Of a stretch of 64,000 nucleotides of DNA, positions 10,658 through 17,596 are shown piece by piece. A program made the position numbers and the translations under genes. The stretch is from the sequence record MZ475898.1; one strand, 5' to 3'. How positions within the stretch are numbered: the stretch's first letter is position 1; every line of letters starts with the position of its first letter. A model generated the notes under the pieces. It saw nothing but the letters and a program-made list of their open reading frames with translations. It was not told the DNA's origin and did not search any database.

Positions 10658-12679
10658 TTAGCCAAATACAATCTCAGTGATTGCAAGATACGTCACATCG
10701 TTTGAGTCACCACGGTCACCAGAACCGTAGGCCATCAACCAAATCTCTTCACCTGCAGGGATGTTAGTGTCGAATGTGATACGTTGCAGAACGTTAGCGC
10801 TTGAGTAAACACGCTGCGCTGCACCAGCACCCGCATAACGTTCGTAGATGGACATGTCGTGCCAGCTACCGTTATTGCCATCAAACACCCAATCAAATGT
10901 GATTCGCTTGATAGGTCGAGTGAAGAAGTTATTCCACTTGAACCAACCATTCGAGCCACCCCAGAAGTTCATATAGCTGCCGTCCCAAACTTTCAGGTTC
11001 TCAATGCCGCCGCTGACTGTACGACCGCCAGTTTGTGTGAATGCATAGCAGTACCATGGGAATGGATCTGAATCAGGCGGCTGTGAGTTACCACCAGCAA
11101 CGGTGATGCAGCGATACGGAACTGTGAAGTCTCTGACGTTAATGTGCGGAGGCTGAATCGGACAGTACACATAGTAAGACCAGTCACACCCGATAGGGCC
11201 TGTAACGCGCACTGTGATTTCAGAACGCAGGACATGCTCAGGGTATTTCCAGAACTCAAGTGTACCAACAGCGCCTGCTACGACAATCGACGTATCAAGC
11301 AGATTCATATCACGGTCAAACACCTCGAACTTGGTGTCGAATGAGTTAGCAACGCATACGACCAGCTCTGCTCGGATATCTGTCTGTGTGCCTAACGCAA
11401 AATTATCTTCTGTGGTTGGATGACCGGCAGAGTAAACGCTGTAGCTTTGGCACGGATGCATGAACTCACGCGCACCACGCTCCGAAGGACAATAAAGGCT
11501 GTAGAAGAAGCTGTCGAGTGATTCAGCGTTTCCAAAGTCTTTAGATACCACGCGCACCATAATGTCACACGCGATGTTCTTAGGGTCAAAGTAGAAATAC
11601 AGATAACCCTCAAGTGTCTTCGCATCAAGCGTTGTTGCAATACGTCTACCGTTTTGATACACCTCAATGAAGTCGAGCGTTTCCCACGAGGTATAATCAA
11701 GGTACATCCAGCCTGCTGTCCAGCCCACAAAGTGATAATACTCGAACGCGTTAGCATTCTGAATACGCTCTGCAATAGGCCACACTGAGGCATGACACGG
11801 AGCTGGGAAGACTGGCGTGCCGATATAGTCAGGGTTGATAACGTCAGGGTAATTGATAACGTCATACGCGGCTTGACTGTCGAGCGCTAACCCACCACGG
11901 TCAGAAGGTGCAGAAAGCAGAGGAGGATAAACCATCATGCTCCAGCCGTAACCTTGAGTTGTGCGCACACGTATCATGATACGCATATCGGCAGCGTCAG
12001 GGTCAAACTGGAACTTGATGCGAGAACGTCCTGTTACTTTGCCGCAAGATGAAGCTACGCGCACGCCCATGTGATAGACGTCAATGCTTGCACCAGCAGG
12101 AGCATACGAAGCAAAGTTAACCTCGACATAACCTTCAGTTGCAGGCAGAGCGTAGATCGTTTCAGTGATAACAGCACCACGACCGTGAGTAGATGCATAA
12201 GGCACGTTGGGGTTAGCATACGTGCCTAGACCTGCTCTCGATGCTACGCCTACAGGGTCATAAGACTCAAGCGTCTTGATGCCTGGGCGATTGATACTGC
12301 GACCAGTTGGCGGTGCTGACGAGTTGACTACACCGAAGCCTGTACGACCCGCATCAGGCAAGTCGAAGCCTATTGGATAGCCTCCAAGAATCGTATAGCT
12401 CTCACGACCACCACTGCCTATACCGTTACCGGAGCCTTTGGTTGTTGACGTAGGGCCACCGCCACATGCACCTGTTTCGAGATTTGAACAGGGATCATCA
12501 TACGTAGGGTCAAACGTGTCATCGATTAAATGCCAGCGCTTGCCCCACTGATTACGCACGCTGAACTTCTCAGGTGTTAGAGGAGTCCAGTCACCTTCCT
12601 TGGTGCGAACGTACATGGGCGTATCGACACAATCAAGCCAACCGTTATTCGCAGCATTACGAACGCGAAAACGTGACAT
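10658..12679 (-). CDS. Virion/fibre protein with three internal repeats
   Basis: 673 aa; three repeats of the type VY..G.R.A....G...F.FDP...I.VRV. Confidence 0.75.
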   Translation of the reverse strand: MSRFRVRNAANNGWLDCVDTPMYVRTKEGDWTPLTPEKFSVRNQWGKRWHLIDDTFDPTYDDPCSNLETGACGGGPTSTTKGSGNGIGSGGRESYTILGGYPIGFDLPDAGRTGFGVVNSSAPPTGRSINRPGIKTLESYDPVGVASRAGLGTYANPNVPYASTHGRGAVITETIYALPATEGYVEVNFASYAPAGASIDVYHMGVRVASSCGKVTGRSRIKFQFDPDAADMRIMIRVRTTQGYGWSMMVYPPLLSAPSDRGGLALDSQAAYDVINYPDVINPDYIGTPVFPAPCHASVWPIAERIQNANAFEYYHFVGWTAGWMYLDYTSWETLDFIEVYQNGRRIATTLDAKTLEGYLYFYFDPKNIACDIMVRVVSKDFGNAESLDSFFYSLYCPSERGAREFMHPCQSYSVYSAGHPTTEDNFALGTQTDIRAELVVCVANSFDTKFEVFDRDMNLLDTSIVVAGAVGTLEFWKYPEHVLRSEITVRVTGPIGCDWSYYVYCPIQPPHINVRDFTVPYRCITVAGGNSQPPDSDPFPWYCYAFTQTGGRTVSGGIENLKVWDGSYMNFWGGSNGWFKWNNFFTRPIKRITFDWVFDGNNGSWHDMSIYERYAGAGAAQRVYSSANVLQRITFDTNIPAGEEIWLMAYGSGDRGDSNDVTYLAITEIVFG

Positions 12680-12690
12680 GTACTATCTCC

Positions 12691-13182
12691 TTACGGGCGA
12701 ATCCACAGTGCACCTGCTGAAATCTCTTGGTCGAGTGCCGGGTCAGTGTCTTGAATGAATATCTCCAAGACACCTGGGTTTCCAGGAGCACCAGTCGGTC
12801 CTGTAGCACCGGTAGGACCTGCTGGACCACGAATACCCACATAGCCTTGCTTGCCTGGCAGACCATCGATACCACGAGGACCAACACATCCGTCAGTACC
12901 ACGCTTACCGTCAGAACCCATCAGGCCGTCGATACCATCACGACCAGAAGCACCAACGCCACCTTCAGGGCCGTAGCCGATGCTGTAGATAGTAGGCAGG
13001 CCAGAGATAGCGAGCTTTCCGATACTCGGAATATTGATAGACAGCACACCTGTCAGTTGATCGAAGGCGCCTTGTAGCGTTGTTTCGTCTTCGGCCACAT
13101 CAACAGACACACCGCCTTGAGTTGCTACTACCTTACCAGACGCATTCGTCTTGAGTAGCGATATATCAACCTTTTCTACCAC
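12691..13182 (-). CDS. Collagen-like fibre protein
   Basis: 163 aa; ~23 G-X-Y triplets; ends in AGALWIRP. Confidence 0.85.
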   Translation of the reverse strand: MVEKVDISLLKTNASGKVVATQGGVSVDVAEDETTLQGAFDQLTGVLSINIPSIGKLAISGLPTIYSIGYGPEGGVGASGRDGIDGLMGSDGKRGTDGCVGPRGIDGLPGKQGYVGIRGPAGPTGATGPTGAPGNPGVLEIFIQDTDPALDQEISAGALWIRP

Positions 13183-13191
13183 GAGAACTCC

Positions 13192-13824
13192 TTATGGCCA
13201 TGTGGTGCCTTGATCTTTAGTAGGGTCGACCCAGAGCGTGCCGGCAGCTACAGCTCCTGGCTGGGTAGCGCTAACGATAATTGCAAGACGACCGGAAGGA
13301 CCTGCAGGACCAGTTGGGCCAGTAGGACCAGTACCACCAGTAGAGCCAGTAGGACCAGTACCACCGCGAGGACCAGTAGGTCCAGTCGGCCCCATAGGTC
13401 CTTCACGACCTTCTCTGCCCGTAGGCCCAACATTACCGTCACGGCCATCACGACCATCCGGGCCTGGTATGCCTTGCTCGCCATCTGGACCAACAGGGCC
13501 TGTACAGCCTGGACCGCCCGTTGCACCATCACGACCATCACGACCGTCTTTTCCGTCTGCACCTGTTTCACCTTTCTGACCTGTACGACCTGCTGGAATA
13601 TCAGACGCAGTTGGGAAACCTGAGACTTTGAGACTACTGCCGTTAGCAAAGCGCAGAGTTAACACGCCCGCAGTAGCGTCATACGAGGAATCTGACGTGA
13701 CTTCTGATGGAGCTTCGGACTCCGCGCTGTTGACAACAAGTGTACCGCCAGATGCTCGGACAGGTGTCGCAACAGAGCTTACGCCCGCAGCGATTAAACT
13801 TGTTTTTACCTTTATCAAACTCAT
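13192..13824 (-). CDS. Collagen-like fibre protein
   Basis: 210 aa; ~34 G-X-Y triplets; AGTLWVDP near the C-terminus. Confidence 0.85.
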
Positions 13825-15260
13825 TACGTCTTCTCCGCCTGAGCAGTCATATCCGTGTTATGAGCCAGAACATCACCAACGAAATAGCAGTCGAAAGGTT
13901 CAACGTCTATGTCTACGGTATTAACGAGTTGGTCTATACGACGACATTCGTATACAGACACAGGACCTTTACGTCCTCTGACTTGCATTCCTTGCTTAAC
14001 TTCACGAGCAGGAACATAGCGCCATTGCTTATCATCGTAGATCAGCACAGGATGTTCGTGCGTAAACTTCTGTCCGTTAATGACGAAGTAGTGATCTTCC
14101 TGACCGTATTTGAGTGCTCGAACAGCAGCATAGACATTCTTACCTTTCAGACTTGGTGAGGACCATTTACGGAACTCTTTAGGCTGATTGGAGAACGATG
14201 CAAGCATATCACCTACAGACAAACGCTCAACAGGCACAGAGCCTGCGATTGTATGCACAGTAGAGCCGAACACGATACAGCCAGATGTTTTACTCACAGG
14301 GTTACGTGCAACTACGGTCAGAGCAGACTTCACTGTGACTGTAGGTCTGGATGGCTGCCCCATGTCTGTTACTAAACAACTGATGGTGCCTCTGATTGTA
14401 CGATCAGCACCGAGACCAAGACGCAGATAGAAGTTAACTATGCAGGTGTTAGTCTCTATGGCGTCAAGGTTAACGCCCTCAGTTGTTGTGATTGTCCACT
14501 TGTACTTGTATGGACCCACACCGCCACGCGCATTGACAGGCAGATAAGCAAGCGAGGTGAATACGTCAGACCCTTGTACTGTGCGCGTGCCTACCATGTA
14601 CAGACTAGACACAGAAGCAACAAGTGGGCTGATAGTAGGAAGAGGAGGTGCTGGCGATACGTTAGCAGTCGGGTACAGCCACACGAACACGTTAGATGCA
14701 GTGGGTTGCACATTAGACAGCACAGCAGTTTCGATAGGCGCAGGACCTGTAGGACCCGTTGCACCTGCAATACAGCTTGGACCGTCATTGCCTCGTGGGC
14801 CGAGTATGCCAGTAGGACCCGTTGGACCGATTGGTCCTGTAGGTCCGTCTTTACCGTCAGGACCCGTGTCACCGTCAGGACCAGTAGCGCCGTCACGACC
14901 AGGTTCACCCGCAGTGCCGTTAAGACCTCTAGCACCAGGGAGACCACCACAGCCGTCAGCACCAGTAGAGCCATCACGTCCATCACGACCGTCACGACCA
15001 GCAGCGCCTGGCGCACCTCTCTTACCTTGCTTACCTGAACCAAACATTGCACTCGTAGGCAGGCCGGGGATATTAACTAAATCCCCATTCTGTTTGATGA
15101 GTACGAGCACGCCGTTCTTACTGTCAAACTTTACGCTTGCGATCTGTGTCGTTGTCAACACATCGGAGGATTCGAATTGAATACCACCAGCAACAGCAAC
15201 AACGGATTTACCTTCATCGTTGCCTGTTGTCTCGATTTGCGAAAGTTTTAAGTCTGTCAT
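13824..15260 (-). CDS. Collagen-like fibre protein with C-terminal Hint (intein-like) domain
   Basis: 478 aa; ~32 G-X-Y triplets, a beta domain, then a Hint domain (C328...THEH...HN468) and a 10-aa tail. Confidence 0.85.
13857..14279 (-). other. Hint/mini-intein domain (141 aa, no endonuclease)
   Basis: Block [11 protein letters not shown]...VERLSVGD; block B FTHEHPVL (TxxH); block [14 protein letters not shown]; block G LAHN followed by T. Confidence 0.8.
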
Positions 15261-17596
15261 TTAGGCTCGACCTTAATGCACAAGTTACCAATCAGCTTCG
15301 AACCGTAGCTCGTGATTTGGGCATTACTGATACGCACCTTAGCGACAATATCAATAAAGCCTTGAGGTTGGTTCTCGGCTAACACAACAAGCATCTGGGT
15401 GATACTGACATTCGAATATGCGATGATCTCGGTCAGGTTTTCTGTAGAATCAACAACGTTGAAACCACTGCTACCCGTACCTTTAAGACCACGACCATAT
15501 TCAGCCTCAGCAAGGCCAGGCGTCTTGTACGATAGAACGTACTCGATATGCTCTTTGCCGCTGGTGGCCTTGAAGCCAGGACCCAATTGACACTGGAAGT
15601 CTGCAACACAGGTAAGCATAACACCTTTCTTGAACTCGATGCGCTGCGTAATCGTCAGCTCCTCTGAGTCCTCAACATCTTGGTGGATGTTGTACATGTT
15701 CTTAGGGTCAGCTTCTTCTGCGAGCGCTTGCGTGTTGCTGATGGTGATGTTCGGCCACTCACCACTGATCTTAATGCCTTCACCCTGAATGATTTCAGGA
15801 ACGAACATAGGCACATCAATCGGCGAGAGTCCCTGACGCTTGAACATGAAGCCTGTTGGCGTAGGGATAACATCAATGATAACGCCATCAACAGAACTGT
15901 CTTTCGAGCCTACAGCCATCACGTTTTCGAAGATGGTGATTTCCACCAGCGTGTCTGCTGGGATAGGCGATACAGTCTGCAACGAGTTACCAACAACGGT
16001 GAAGTCAGAAGGATGAATCGTCAGACCACCCATCGTTGCAACAACGTGCGCTTTGTTCAGTGGGCTAGTCGGAAGAATGTATGTATCAGCATCATAAGGA
16101 AGGCGATACTGAGAAACACGCATACGAGTAGACCAGTTGGCGCGTTCTTCATAGCGGGCAACATAGAAAGAATATTTCTGGCCAGAAGGAATTGCCTGCG
16201 TTAGCGTAATCTTATTGCCGTTGTTGATCTTGTAGACTGTGGAGGGCTGCCACGTTGAGCCTACAACACAGAAGACCATATCAGCGCTTTCGATTACTTG
16301 ACTACCCAGAGAGAACTGAGTTGTCTGACCGTCACCTACACCTTCGTACAGCTCAAACAGAACGACATGGCCTTGAGATGGTTCGATACGGAACTGTCTC
16401 AGGTCAAGCAGCATCTGTTGTTCAGGGTATGACGAGAGCAGCAACTGATCTTCCTGAACGGAGTATGCAGTACGCGGCTGGAGAACGCCTGACGTGCCTA
16501 CAAACAAATCAGTAGAGCTATCAAGAATTTCGGTCAGTTGGTAACGCAGAGCATCAGGAGTAGCTGTGGTCACAACAGAACTAAACAGCATCTTGCCTGG
16601 AGGTACAAACAGGCTTGCAGTCGTCTGACGTGAACCACCAACAGGACCCCAATACGGTTCGTTGTCTGCACCACGCATCAATCCCCAAGTGCTTGGCACA
16701 TCGTTGTTAGCAGGCCACGGGATGCCAGCGCTCGGCGTAGTTGGGTTAGTGATTCGACGCCACACAGCGATAGACGTTTGCGCAGATACGAATGGGATAG
16801 CGCTGTCCAAGTTGACAAGCTGCTGGTTGGTGTATTTGAAGTGACGACAAGCGCCTGCACCAGTACCTGCAATAGTCTGCACGAGGACGGTCTCACCTTC
16901 TTTGAGAGAAGTAAGACTTGGAATCTTAAACGTGTTAGCGTTAATGAAACCAGTAGAGGTAATCTGGCCGCTGAACACACGGTCGTGCTCGCTGAAAGCC
17001 CAATAGTAAGAGCCTGCACCGTAGCGCGAAGCCTGACCAGGAGACTTAGAGCCATCGCTATTGATATGCATGTCCAGCACAGACACAACGTTGAACACGT
17101 TATCGTTCAAGCTAGGCAGATTCTCCAGCGTTGCTACACTCGGGATGGACGTGTAATCCGCCATCTCAACAGCAAGAATCTTCTGGACGTCCTGCGTCAA
17201 ATGGATGAGCAAGCTAACGCGAGACACAGAATTTGGAACTGCAATGATAGGCTCTTGCAGAACAACGTGACCGAAAGGACGGTTGTCTTTGAGCATGATC
17301 ATCAACTCACCCACACGCTTCAATTGCTCACCAGCGGCGTAGGTCAGTTTTATATCAAAGATAAAGCGTGCGCTATTCTCAGAGAGAACCTGTACATAGG
17401 ACAGGGCGCCGGAAGCAAGCTCGTTGCCAAGTAACTGCTCTGGAACCTCAGATGGGTTAGAGCCGATATAGTCACCTGCTTTGAACGAAACTGGCTGCAC
17501 AGCAATGCCGCCTGCGTTAGCGTTCGCAACGGCCTGTTCTCCCTGAGGCGTTAAACGCAGAGCGTCAACGTAGATAGATTCATCAGCGGCCATCAA
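15257..17596 (-). CDS. Tail-collar/baseplate-attached fibre protein
   Basis: 779 aa; N-terminal [12 protein letters not shown]...GGIAV resembles tail-collar fibre N-termini; three internal beta repeats. Confidence 0.6.

What the first reader, a model, noticed from the sequence alone, without database searches (positions are those of the whole stretch)
13824..14279. Splicing-competent-looking mini-intein at the tip of a collagen fibre with a 10-residue C-extein
All canonical catalytic positions are present: Cys1 (C328), TxxH (THEH), block F Asp, penultimate His, terminal Asn468 and +1 Thr. There is no homing endonuclease, and only [10 protein letters not shown] follows. Inteins usually sit in conserved replication enzymes; the C-terminal position here resembles bacterial intein-like/Hedgehog Hint domains. 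Inference: a programmed maturation step that splices on a short tail, releases the domain, or ligates the activated fibre C-terminus (...KTSG-thioester) to another protein or small molecule.
Basis: partly seen in the sequence, partly recalled or inferred. Interest (0 to 1): 0.8.

Follow-up and report, generated by a model that had tools for sequence, protein, structure and literature searches.

The report
Self-removing Hint domain on phage fibre
A collagen-like tail-fibre protein of an Erwinia jumbo phage ends in a conserved, non-mobile intein-like (Hint) domain that most likely cuts itself off during fibre maturation; it belongs to a large, little-studied class of such domains that are followed only by a short lysine-bearing tail.

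Summary
The window is Erwinia jumbo phage pEa_SNUABM_25. Gene 13824..15260 (-) encodes a 478-aa fibre protein: N-domain, collagen repeats, a 150-aa beta-sandwich, a 141-aa Hint domain (C328..N468) and a 10-aa tail.

The Hint domain models confidently. Its closest solved structures are bacterial intein-like (BIL) domains: 2lwy, then Tetrahymena BIL2.

It is not a mobile intein:
- It has no endonuclease.
- Every close homologue carries it.
- It has been co-inherited with the fibre down to 38% identity.
- The one Hint-free orthologue (Dickeya JA phages, 324 aa) stops 6 residues before the junction and also lacks the tail.

The "splicing-competent" Thr+1 is lineage-specific. Orthologues have Val, Ala or Met there.

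Among 145 distant relatives with an aligned His-Asn junction (of 150 examined), 103 have only a tail of at most 20 aa. Of these tails, 99 contain Lys (27 expected).

Best reading: a domesticated BIL-type autoprocessing module that excises itself from the mature fibre. The chemical route is unresolved: Thr+1 splice, Lys isopeptide transfer or hydrolysis. No processing has been shown. GenBank notes for phages Y3 and NCTB already say "contains intein domain".

The parts
13824..15260 (-). Whole gene: 478-aa collagen-like tail-fibre protein with a C-terminal Hint domain (stop 13824-13826)
   Evidence: phrog_38766, full length; 100% identical to MZ475898
15039..15260 (-). N-terminal domain (aa 1-74), shared with the two downstream paralogues
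   Evidence: alignment of the three paralogues
14736..15035 (-). Collagen G-X-Y region (aa 76-175), with invariant Cys104 and Cys163
   Evidence: Pfam Collagen E=1e-13
14298..14735 (-). Middle beta-sandwich (Ig-like) domain (aa 176-321). The Hint-free JA11 orthologue ends one residue after the equivalent of aa 321
   Evidence: AF2 pLDDT 72-92 and all-beta; weak Ig/cadherin/pilus-chaperone fold hits
14280..14297 (-). Six-residue linker (aa 322-327) ending in invariant Gly327, the predicted -1 residue that would carry the thioester
13857..14279 (-). Hint (BIL-type) domain, Cys328 to Asn468, with block B T400-x-x-H403 and terminal His467-Asn468
13827..13856 (-). Ten-residue tail (Thr469..Thr478) containing invariant Lys477
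   Evidence: family-wide Lys enrichment
13833..13836 (-). GGAG Shine-Dalgarno of the downstream gene, lying inside the Ala475/Glu476 codons of the tail
13192..13824 (-). Paralogue 2: 210-aa collagen-like fibre protein without a Hint domain. Its start overlaps the stop of the Hint gene by 1 nt
12691..13182 (-). Paralogue 3: 163-aa collagen-like fibre protein without a Hint domain
15257..17596 (-). Upstream cassette gene, 779 aa, with a weak tail-collar-fibre N-terminal match. Its stop overlaps the Hint gene's start by 4 nt
10658..12679 (-). Downstream cassette gene, 673 aa. The body is conserved and the C-terminal ~145 aa are divergent

Best explanation
The C-terminal 151 residues are a domesticated, non-mobile Hint domain of the bacterial-intein-like (A-type BIL / PT-HINT) kind. 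It is fused through a short Gly-ended linker to a collagen-like tail-fibre protein.

Inferred mechanism:
1. After folding, Cys328 attacks the Gly327 carbonyl (N-to-S acyl shift), giving a thioester.
2. The thioester is resolved and Asn468 cyclises, so the ~16-kDa Hint domain is excised.
3. The mature fibre ends at or just after Gly327. That is almost exactly the length of the natural Hint-free orthologue in Dickeya JA phages.

In this lineage the acyl group is probably passed to the 10-residue tail before the Hint domain leaves, either to the Thr469 hydroxyl or to the amine of the invariant Lys477. The mature fibre would then carry a small tail remnant. Plain hydrolysis is the alternative.

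The likely role is a transient C-terminal maturation module of the fibre, controlling folding or assembly. It would be analogous in logic to the self-cleaving C-terminal chaperone domains of other phage fibres; it is not a selfish element.

Shown here: the fold, the catalytic residues, their conservation, the distribution and the Hint-free orthologue. Inferred: that processing happens, its route and its purpose.
For: - Fold: AF2 pLDDT 85-93. Foldseek's best PDB hits are 2lwy (BIL, TM 0.80) and Tetrahymena BIL2 6y75/6tmm (TM 0.75), followed by mini-inteins. The family profile hits 2lwy at E=2.3e-7 over its full length.
- Catalytic set: invariant in 21 clusters. In 76-150 distant relatives, Cys1, block-B Thr and His, and the terminal His-Asn are at least 90% conserved. 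His-Asn is present in 145 of 150.
- Not mobile: every homologue of the middle domain or the Hint domain in 5.8e9 proteins is 476-481 aa long. Afa-NA1 has an end-to-end homologue at 38% identity with the same architecture. The same gene cassette occurs in NCTB, Afa-NA1 and Sen-NF.
- Dispensable in the mature fibre: JA11 gp096 (324 aa, 49% identity over aa 4-321) ends 6 residues before the junction, in the same cassette.
- Precedent: BIL domains autocleave (PMC7765530). BIL2 forms a Lys isopeptide to the C-terminus (PMC8616854, section 2.4).
Against: - No experimental evidence of processing was found for any member. I found no virion proteomics that gives peptide coverage for this protein.
- Pfam Hint models match only below their curated thresholds (Hint_2 21.2 vs 28.4 bits; PT-HINT 16.9 vs 27.7).
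- The tail is modelled with low confidence (pLDDT <50), so its position relative to the active site is unknown.
- The JA phages show that the fibre can exist without the module, so its benefit is unclear.
- A Hint domain is not known to trimerise, so a chaperone-like role is only an analogy.
Confidence: 0.6

Rival explanations
1. It is a canonical class-1 cis-splicing mini-intein. Thr469 attacks the thioester, Asn468 cyclises, and the 10-residue tail is joined by a normal peptide bond. Attaching that tail is the selected function.
For: All class-1 positions are present in the window protein. Position +1 is Thr or Ser in all 21 close clusters and Thr in Alexandra, Y3 and Yoloswag. The tail is conserved within the genus group.
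Against: - Position +1 is Val in the 55%-identical Yersinia phage orthologue, Ala in P0022, P0023 and NCTB, and Met in Afa-NA1/Sen-NF.
- Only 16 of 145 distant relatives have C/S/T at +1.
- Part of the tail's conservation is explained by the next gene's GGAG lying inside the tail codons.
- The Hint-free JA11 orthologue has no tail at all.
Confidence: 0.15
2. It is a ligation device. The Hint-generated thioester at Gly327 is captured by a lysine or other amine of another virion protein or of the host surface, giving a covalent cross-link. This would be Hedgehog-like or BUBL-like transfer to an external acceptor.
For: Structurally close BIL2 conjugates its N-extein to lysines of other proteins (PMC8616854). 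The domain sits at the distal end of a fibre protein within a multi-protein fibre cassette.
Against: - There is no acceptor-binding region after the Hint domain, only 10 residues.
- The conserved His-Asn and tail Lys point to an intramolecular resolution.
- A thioester would be labile in stored virions.
- JA phages manage without it.
Confidence: 0.08
3. The Hint domain is retained unprocessed in the virion as a structural or receptor-binding distal knob. Its catalytic residues are conserved for structural reasons or are relics.
For: The protein family is annotated as a virion structural protein. No processing data exist. The domain is compact and well folded in the model.
Against: - Cys1, TxxH and His-Asn are invariant across 38-100% identity, and at least 90% conserved in hundreds of distant relatives, while surrounding residues vary. 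This is the signature of retained chemistry.
- The Hint-free JA orthologue sits in an otherwise identical cassette.
Confidence: 0.12
4. It is an ordinary selfish mini-intein that invaded the fibre gene and is neutral to it.
For: A Hint-free orthologue exists (JA11). Inteins are common in phage genomes, for example in terminases (PMC3556154, PMC7412058).
Against: - There is no endonuclease and no room for one.
- The Hint-free allele lacks the C-extein and linker, so there is no homing site.
- The domain is strictly co-inherited with the fibre over deep divergence.
- It sits at the extreme C-terminus of a non-conserved structural protein.
- Its nearest relatives are BIL/PT-HINT domains, not inteins.
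Confidence: 0.05

Closest known systems
A-type bacterial intein-like (BIL) domain, e.g. the Clostridium thermocellum BIL domain (PDB 2lwy)
   Same: Best sequence and structure match. Both have an N-terminal Cys, TxxH and a terminal His-Asn. Both are small, lack an endonuclease, and sit in variable non-housekeeping proteins. In most family members there is no nucleophile at +1.
   Different: Here the domain is at the extreme C-terminus, followed only by a short Lys-bearing tail. It is in phage collagen-like fibre proteins. This particular lineage has Thr at +1.
Pfam PT-HINT (PF07591), the pretoxin Hint domain of polymorphic toxins
   Same: It is the Pfam family matched by most distant relatives: 49 of 76, best E=6.5e-42. 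It is also listed as a precomputed hit for several close homologues. The presumed role, autoproteolytic release, is the same.
   Different: No toxin or other domain follows the Hint domain. The window protein scores below the curated cut-off (16.9 vs 27.7 bits).
Tetrahymena BUBL BIL2 domain (PDB 6y75/6tmm)
   Same: Second-best structural match, TM 0.75. BIL2 resolves its thioester onto a lysine epsilon-amine (PMC8616854), which gives a precedent for a role of the near-universal tail Lys.
   Different: There are no ubiquitin-like flanks here, sequence identity is about 17-18%, and the organism and context differ. Lys transfer is untested here.
Canonical class-1 mini-inteins (e.g. gp41-1, Npu DnaB, RadA mini-intein)
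   Same: Same fold and the same catalytic positions, including Thr+1 in this lineage.
   Different: It is not inserted in a conserved site of a conserved enzyme. There is no intein-free allele with joined exteins. The +1 nucleophile is not conserved in orthologues. Structural matches are weaker (E 1e-5 to 1e-3, against 3e-7 for BIL).
Hedgehog Hog autoprocessing domain
   Same: A C-terminal Hint domain that activates a Gly-Cys junction as a thioester to process the N-terminal functional part. Many relatives have Gly-Cys-Phe-type junctions.
   Different: There is no sterol- or adduct-recognition region after the Hint domain. The terminal His-Asn is present here; by my recollection Hog domains lack it, which is not tested here.
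Self-cleaving C-terminal intramolecular chaperone domains of phage tail fibres and spikes (Peptidase S74; from general knowledge)
   Same: Same logic: a C-terminal module of a phage fibre that removes itself after doing its job.
   Different: Unrelated fold and chemistry. There is no Pfam match to that family. This is an analogy only.

Membership tests
Hint superfamily | Hint (horseshoe beta) fold | tested here: met
   AF2 pLDDT 85-93 over residues 328-469. The top 21 PDB matches at E<=1e-3 are all BIL domains or inteins.
Hint superfamily | Sequence match above the curated Pfam thresholds | tested here: not met
   Hint_2 scores 21.2 bits against 28.4, and PT-HINT 16.9 against 27.7. However, the family profile hits 2lwy at E=2.3e-7, and distant relatives reach PT-HINT at 6.5e-42.
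Hint superfamily | N-terminal Cys/Ser nucleophile and block B TxxH | tested here: met
   C328, T400 and H403 are invariant in 21 clusters and at least 90% conserved in distant relatives.
Canonical class-1 intein | Terminal His-Asn plus a Cys/Ser/Thr at +1 | tested here: inconclusive
   Present in the window (H467, N468, T469). In orthologues, +1 is Val, Ala or Met.
Canonical class-1 intein | Insertion into a host protein whose intein-free alleles have contiguous N- and C-exteins | tested here: not met
   The only Hint-free orthologue (JA11 gp096) ends before the junction and has no C-extein. No other Hint-free allele was found.
Canonical class-1 intein | Homing endonuclease or a remnant of one; evidence of mobility | tested here: not met
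   The domain is 141 aa with no insert. Inheritance with the fibre is vertical down to 38% identity.
Canonical class-1 intein | Demonstrated protein splicing | not testable with these tools
   This needs protein-level data.
A-type BIL domain | Conserved C-terminal His-Asn | tested here: met
   Invariant in 21 clusters and present in 145 of 150 relatives.
A-type BIL domain | No nucleophilic residue at the C'-flank | tested here: inconclusive
   The window has Thr469. The wider family has C/S/T at +1 in only 16 of 145 members.
A-type BIL domain | Located in variable, non-conserved (secreted or surface) proteins | tested here: met
   It is in a tail-fibre protein. Relatives carry collagen, Ig, PKD, Calx-beta, BACON and fn3 domains.
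A-type BIL domain | Closest solved relative is a BIL domain | tested here: met
   2lwy is the best hit by sequence and by structure.
PT-HINT (polymorphic toxin pretoxin Hint) | A toxin or other cargo domain follows the Hint domain | tested here: not met
   Only 10 residues follow.
Hedgehog Hog domain | Sterol- or adduct-recognition region C-terminal to the Hint domain | tested here: not met
   Only a 10-residue tail follows.
BUBL-type BIL (isopeptide-forming) | Ubiquitin-like domains flanking the BIL domain | tested here: not met
   Pfam finds only collagen and Hint.
BUBL-type BIL (isopeptide-forming) | A lysine acceptor resolves the thioester | not testable with these tools
   Lys477 is invariant, and Lys lies within 12 aa of His-Asn in 132 of 145 relatives. 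The chemistry itself is untested.
Peptidase S74 intramolecular chaperone | Sequence or fold similarity to the family | tested here: not met
   There is no Pfam hit, and the fold is Hint.

The most novel reading that the evidence does not exclude
The short tail is not an extein but the built-in acceptor of a distinct reaction class. In these terminal Hint modules, a lysine a few residues after His-Asn would take the N-extein acyl group from the thioester as an isopeptide. Asn cyclisation would then discard the Hint domain. The result would be 'isopeptide self-splicing' that needs no Cys/Ser/Thr at +1.

This would define a widespread class (hundreds of 50%-identity clusters) of self-removing C-terminal maturation modules, especially on phage fibre and adhesin-like proteins. 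It would also predict a branched C-terminus on the mature fibre.
Probability: 0.25. Interest if true: 0.75.

Novelty: new variant of a known kind. Interest (0 to 1): 0.5.

Why it matters
Hint and BIL domains are known, and the GenBank records of phages Y3 and NCTB already note an intein domain in this tail protein. What appears to be undescribed is the pattern:
- A terminal Hint domain that is stably inherited with a phage collagen-like fibre cassette across very different phages.
- A natural Hint-free orthologue that ends just before the junction.
- A family-wide hallmark of a very short tail that nearly always contains lysine, while the canonical +1 nucleophile is mostly absent.

If processing is confirmed, three things would follow. 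It would add an intein-type chemistry to the set of phage fibre maturation mechanisms. It might identify a natural lysine-directed splicing module that is compact enough for protein engineering. It would also help to define the proteins behind the unexplained "hairs" of the hairy jumbo myoviruses.

Tried and rejected
- Single-sequence AlphaFold2 of residues 201-478 gave pLDDT 36 and was unusable. It was replaced by the alignment-based model.
- NCBIfam has no model for the Hint part.
- Pfam on the full set of 150 relatives exceeded the size limit, so a 76-member subset was used.
- Full-text searches for Hint or BIL domains in phage tail fibres, and for intein-like lysine isopeptide chemistry beyond BUBL, found nothing specific.
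- The Y3 paper is not held in the library. The AD1/JA and PaBG papers contain no proteomic coverage of this protein.
- I considered whether the tail's conservation is purely a Shine-Dalgarno artefact. That holds only partly, for the Ala-Glu codons in the jumbo-phage group. It cannot explain Lys in 99 of 103 unrelated tails.
- I considered whether the Lys enrichment is a generic gene-end bias. It was rejected against three controls: each protein's own composition (27 expected), long-flank relatives (6 of 42 with Lys in the last 4 residues) and window ORFs (9 of 58 with Lys in the last 3).
- The 'large intein domain protein' labels on neighbouring genes in NCTB and Afa-NA1 have no Pfam support.
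Full report
**Identity of the window and the gene.**
- Region 12600-15400 is 100% identical to Erwinia phage pEa_SNUABM_25 (MZ475898, 263 kb). It is 96-99% identical to eight sister isolates and about 74% identical to other Alexandravirus-type jumbo phages, including Dickeya phage AD1.
- The finding lies at the 3' end of ORF 13824..15260 on the minus strand, which encodes 478 aa.
- The Cys328 codon is 14279-14277, His467-Asn468 are 13862-13857, Thr469 is 13856-13854 and the stop is 13826-13824. The ATG of the next gene begins at 13824.

**Anatomy of the protein.**
- An N-terminal domain (aa 1-74) is shared with the two downstream paralogues.
- A collagen G-X-Y run spans aa 76-175 (Pfam Collagen E=1e-13).
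- An all-beta middle domain spans aa 176-321, followed by a six-residue linker ending in Gly327.
- The Hint-like domain runs from Cys328 to Asn468 and is followed by a ten-residue tail.
- The Hint domain is therefore separated from the collagen by a domain of about 150 aa, a small correction to the finding's title.

**Is it a Hint domain?**
- Single-sequence searches are weak. Pfam Hint_2 gives E=4e-4 (21.2 bits, cut-off 28.4) and PT-HINT gives E=0.008. phmmer against the PDB has its best hit at the bacterial intein-like domain 2lwy, E=0.019, aligned end to end up to the terminal His-Asn.
- A profile of 21 homologue clusters raises the 2lwy hit to E=2.3e-7 over the full length. It is the only non-collagen PDB family found.
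- AlphaFold2 with that alignment gives pLDDT of about 85-93 for residues 210-469.
- Foldseek against the PDB returns 2lwy first (E=2.8e-7, TM 0.80). Next is the BIL2 domain of the Tetrahymena BUBL locus (6y75/6tmm, TM 0.70-0.75), followed by some fifteen mini-inteins.
- The domain is a Hint fold, and its nearest solved relatives are BIL domains rather than replication-enzyme inteins.

**Conservation.**
- Searches of 5.8 billion proteins with either the Hint part or the middle domain return only proteins of 476-481 aa.
- In their alignment (45-100% identity) the following are invariant: G327, C328, T400, H401, E402, H403, P404, H467, N468, D470, E476 and K477. Position +1 is Thr in 20 clusters and Ser in one.
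- tblastn against 50,697 phage records finds the domain in 57 records. These are the Alexandravirus group, Y3, Yoloswag, pEa_SNUABM_5 and Yersinia phage fHe-Yen9-02. More distant matches are Alcaligenes phage Afa-NA1 and Salmonella phage Sen-NF (34% identity), phage NCTB (31%), two Ruminococcus phages and an uncultured 484-kb phage.

**It is inherited with the fibre and is not mobile.**
- Afa-NA1, Sen-NF and NCTB carry the same gene cassette. It consists of a large protein, a ~476-506-aa collagen/Hint protein and collagen paralogues of ~210 aa and ~164 aa. In Afa-NA1 and Sen-NF a further protein follows directly; NCTB has an extra 153-aa ORF inside the cassette.
- The Afa-NA1 protein aligns with the window protein from residue 4 to residue 470 at 38% identity.
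- The 673-aa downstream protein is 57% identical to its Sen-NF counterpart over residues 1-527.
- The 141-aa domain has no room for a homing endonuclease.

**A natural Hint-free orthologue.**
- The middle domain, but not the Hint domain, is found in the Dickeya JA phages (Salmondvirus).
- JA11 has the same cassette: gp097 (773 aa), gp096 (324 aa), gp095 (210 aa), gp094 (164 aa) and gp093 (673 aa).
- gp096 is 49% identical to the window protein over residues 4-321. It stops one residue after the equivalent of Pro321, six residues before the Gly327|Cys328 junction, with no linker, no Hint domain and no tail.
- This is not an empty intein site with joined exteins. The whole appendage (linker, Hint domain and tail) is present or absent as a unit.
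- The fibre evidently functions at the length that excision of the Hint domain would produce.

**The +1 nucleophile is lineage-specific.**
- Reading the junctions as they stand, +1 is Thr in the window, Alexandra, Y3 and Yoloswag.
- It is Val in the 55%-identical Yersinia phage orthologue, Met in Afa-NA1/Sen-NF and Ala in NCTB.
- It is Ala in the 480-484-aa metagenomic orthologues P0022 and P0023.
- Canonical class-1 splicing through residue +1 therefore cannot be the function that conserved this module.
- In the jumbo-phage group, the GGAG Shine-Dalgarno of the next gene lies inside the Ala-Glu codons of the tail (13836-13833 in the window). Part of the tail's conservation is thus a nucleotide-level constraint.

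**The wider family.**
- An exhaustive phmmer search of 1.84 billion cluster representatives found 271 relatives at E<=1e-3.
- Of the best 150, 145 have His-Asn at the aligned C-junction. In 103 of these, only 1-20 residues follow, most often 4-10.
- Position +1 is mostly Ala, Lys, Val, Leu or Asn. Only 16 of 145 have Cys, Ser or Thr there.
- The N-junction is typically a glycine run followed by Cys: 67 of 105 scorable cases.
- Of 76 relatives of 250-760 aa, 49 match Pfam PT-HINT (best E=6.5e-42), 29 match Hint_2 and 17 carry collagen repeats. Others carry Ig, PKD, Calx-beta, BACON or fn3 domains.
- Of the same 76, 64 match phrog_38766 and 17 match tail-fibre PHROGs.
- BFVD fold matches include uncultured Caudovirales proteins annotated fn3, PASTA and 'Hint domain containing'.
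- The window protein is thus one member of a large class of fibre- or adhesin-like proteins, many of them from phages, that end in a BIL-type Hint domain.

**An unexplained hallmark: lysine in the tail.**
- 99 of the 103 short tails contain Lys, against 27 expected from each protein's own composition. Arg is depleted: 9 observed against 20.4 expected.
- Lys makes up 14.3% of tail residues and Arg 1.5%.
- The last Lys lies within the final three residues in 69 of 103 tails. The same is true of only 9 of 58 long ORFs of this window. Among relatives with long C-flanks, 6 of 42 have Lys in the last four residues.
- In relatives with long C-flanks, Lys is at +1 in 23 of 42 and within +10 in 33 of 42, against 14.2 expected.
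- Overall, 132 of 145 have Lys within 12 residues after His-Asn. In the window this is the invariant Lys477.
- The second-best structural match, BIL2, is reported to resolve its thioester onto a lysine epsilon-amine, forming an isopeptide to the C-terminus (PMC8616854, section 2.4).
- This makes a lysine-directed resolution of the thioester a concrete and testable hypothesis, but it is inference only. The tail is modelled at pLDDT <50.

**Most likely mechanism.**
- Shown: the fold, the catalytic residues, their conservation, the distribution and the Hint-free orthologue.
- Inferred steps: Cys328 forms a thioester at Gly327, the acyl group is resolved, and Asn468 cyclises. The Hint domain is excised and the mature fibre ends at about residue 327, possibly carrying the ten-residue tail.
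- The acyl group could be resolved by transfer to the tail, through Thr469 in this lineage or Lys477 generally, or by hydrolysis.
- The module would act as a transient C-terminal maturation device.
- I put about 0.6 on autocatalytic removal and do not commit between the three chemical routes beyond a slight preference for transfer to the tail.
- Rivals are scored in the report sections: canonical splicing as the selected function, trans-ligation to another protein, a retained structural knob, and a selfish mini-intein.

**Context and prior knowledge.**
- AD1, Y3 and the JA phages are 'hairy Myoviridae'. The proteins forming the hairs are unknown, and the tail-fibre proteins were named as candidates (PMC6143709). 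The collagen-like cassette is an obvious candidate, but I have no evidence for it.
- The GenBank notes for Y3_110 and NCTB BN7874_136 already read 'putative phage tail protein, contains intein domain'. The bare presence of the domain is therefore not new.
- I found no paper that analyses it, and the Y3 paper is not in the library.
- BIL domains are reviewed as autocleaving Hint domains in variable bacterial proteins, the A-type having conserved His-Asn (PMC7765530).

**Verdict.**
- The feature is real and functional-looking. It is best filed as a BIL-type (A-type BIL / PT-HINT-like) terminal autoprocessing Hint domain, not as a member of the canonical inteins.
- It is a new variant of a known kind. 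The variant features are the extreme C-terminal position on phage collagen-like fibres and the short lysine-bearing tail.
- Interest is moderate (0.5). It would be higher if lysine-directed splicing is confirmed.

Noticed in passing
window 12691-15260 (-): The three adjacent collagen-like paralogues (478, 210 and 163 aa) share the N-terminal domain. Each has a single Cys in the same aligned G-X-Y column (C104, C107 and C99). The genes are tightly coupled, with a 4-nt overlap upstream, a 1-nt overlap, and then 9- and 11-nt gaps. This would fit an A-B-C heterotrimeric collagen fibre with an interchain disulfide knot, in which only one chain carries the middle domain and the Hint domain.
   Followed up: partly
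L003 4483-4944 (phage NCTB, BN7874_135): A stand-alone 153-aa Hint-like ORF sits directly after NCTB's Hint-bearing fibre gene. It has only about 7 residues before its Cys and 3 residues (starting with Lys) after its His-Asn. Its BFVD model matches the window's Hint domain at TM 0.83. Its Pfam Intein_splicing match is only E=0.019.
   Followed up: partly
window 10658-12679 (-): The 673-aa protein downstream of the collagen genes is 57% identical to Salmonella phage Sen-NF's 670-aa protein over residues 1-527, but diverges over the last ~145 residues. This is the pattern expected of a receptor-binding tip. It has no Pfam family. Homologues in Afa-NA1 and NCTB are labelled 'large intein domain protein' without any Pfam support.
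   Followed up: partly
L002 and L004 (Alcaligenes phage Afa-NA1, 78 kb; Salmonella phage Sen-NF, 108 kb): These two records have different stated hosts and genome sizes, yet carry what looks like the same fibre cassette. The Hint-gene 3' end is identical in sequence, and the gene coordinates within the fetched loci are the same. This could reflect a shared module, or the records may need checking.
   Followed up: no
window 13833-13836 (-): The Shine-Dalgarno GGAG of the 210-aa gene lies inside the Hint gene's tail codons. The arrangement is conserved in Alexandra, Y3, Yoloswag and fHe-Yen9-02, so the tail sequence is under dual constraint.
   Followed up: yes
L006 3178-3471 (Yoloswag): In Yoloswag, an annotated HNH endonuclease gene directly follows the three collagen genes, where the other phages have the ~673-aa protein.
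   Followed up: no
L008 (Y3_110) and L003 (BN7874_136): Existing GenBank notes already state 'putative phage tail protein, contains intein domain'. The RefSeq and PHROG label 'virion structural protein / head and packaging' for this family looks like a miscategorised tail-fibre protein.
   Followed up: yes
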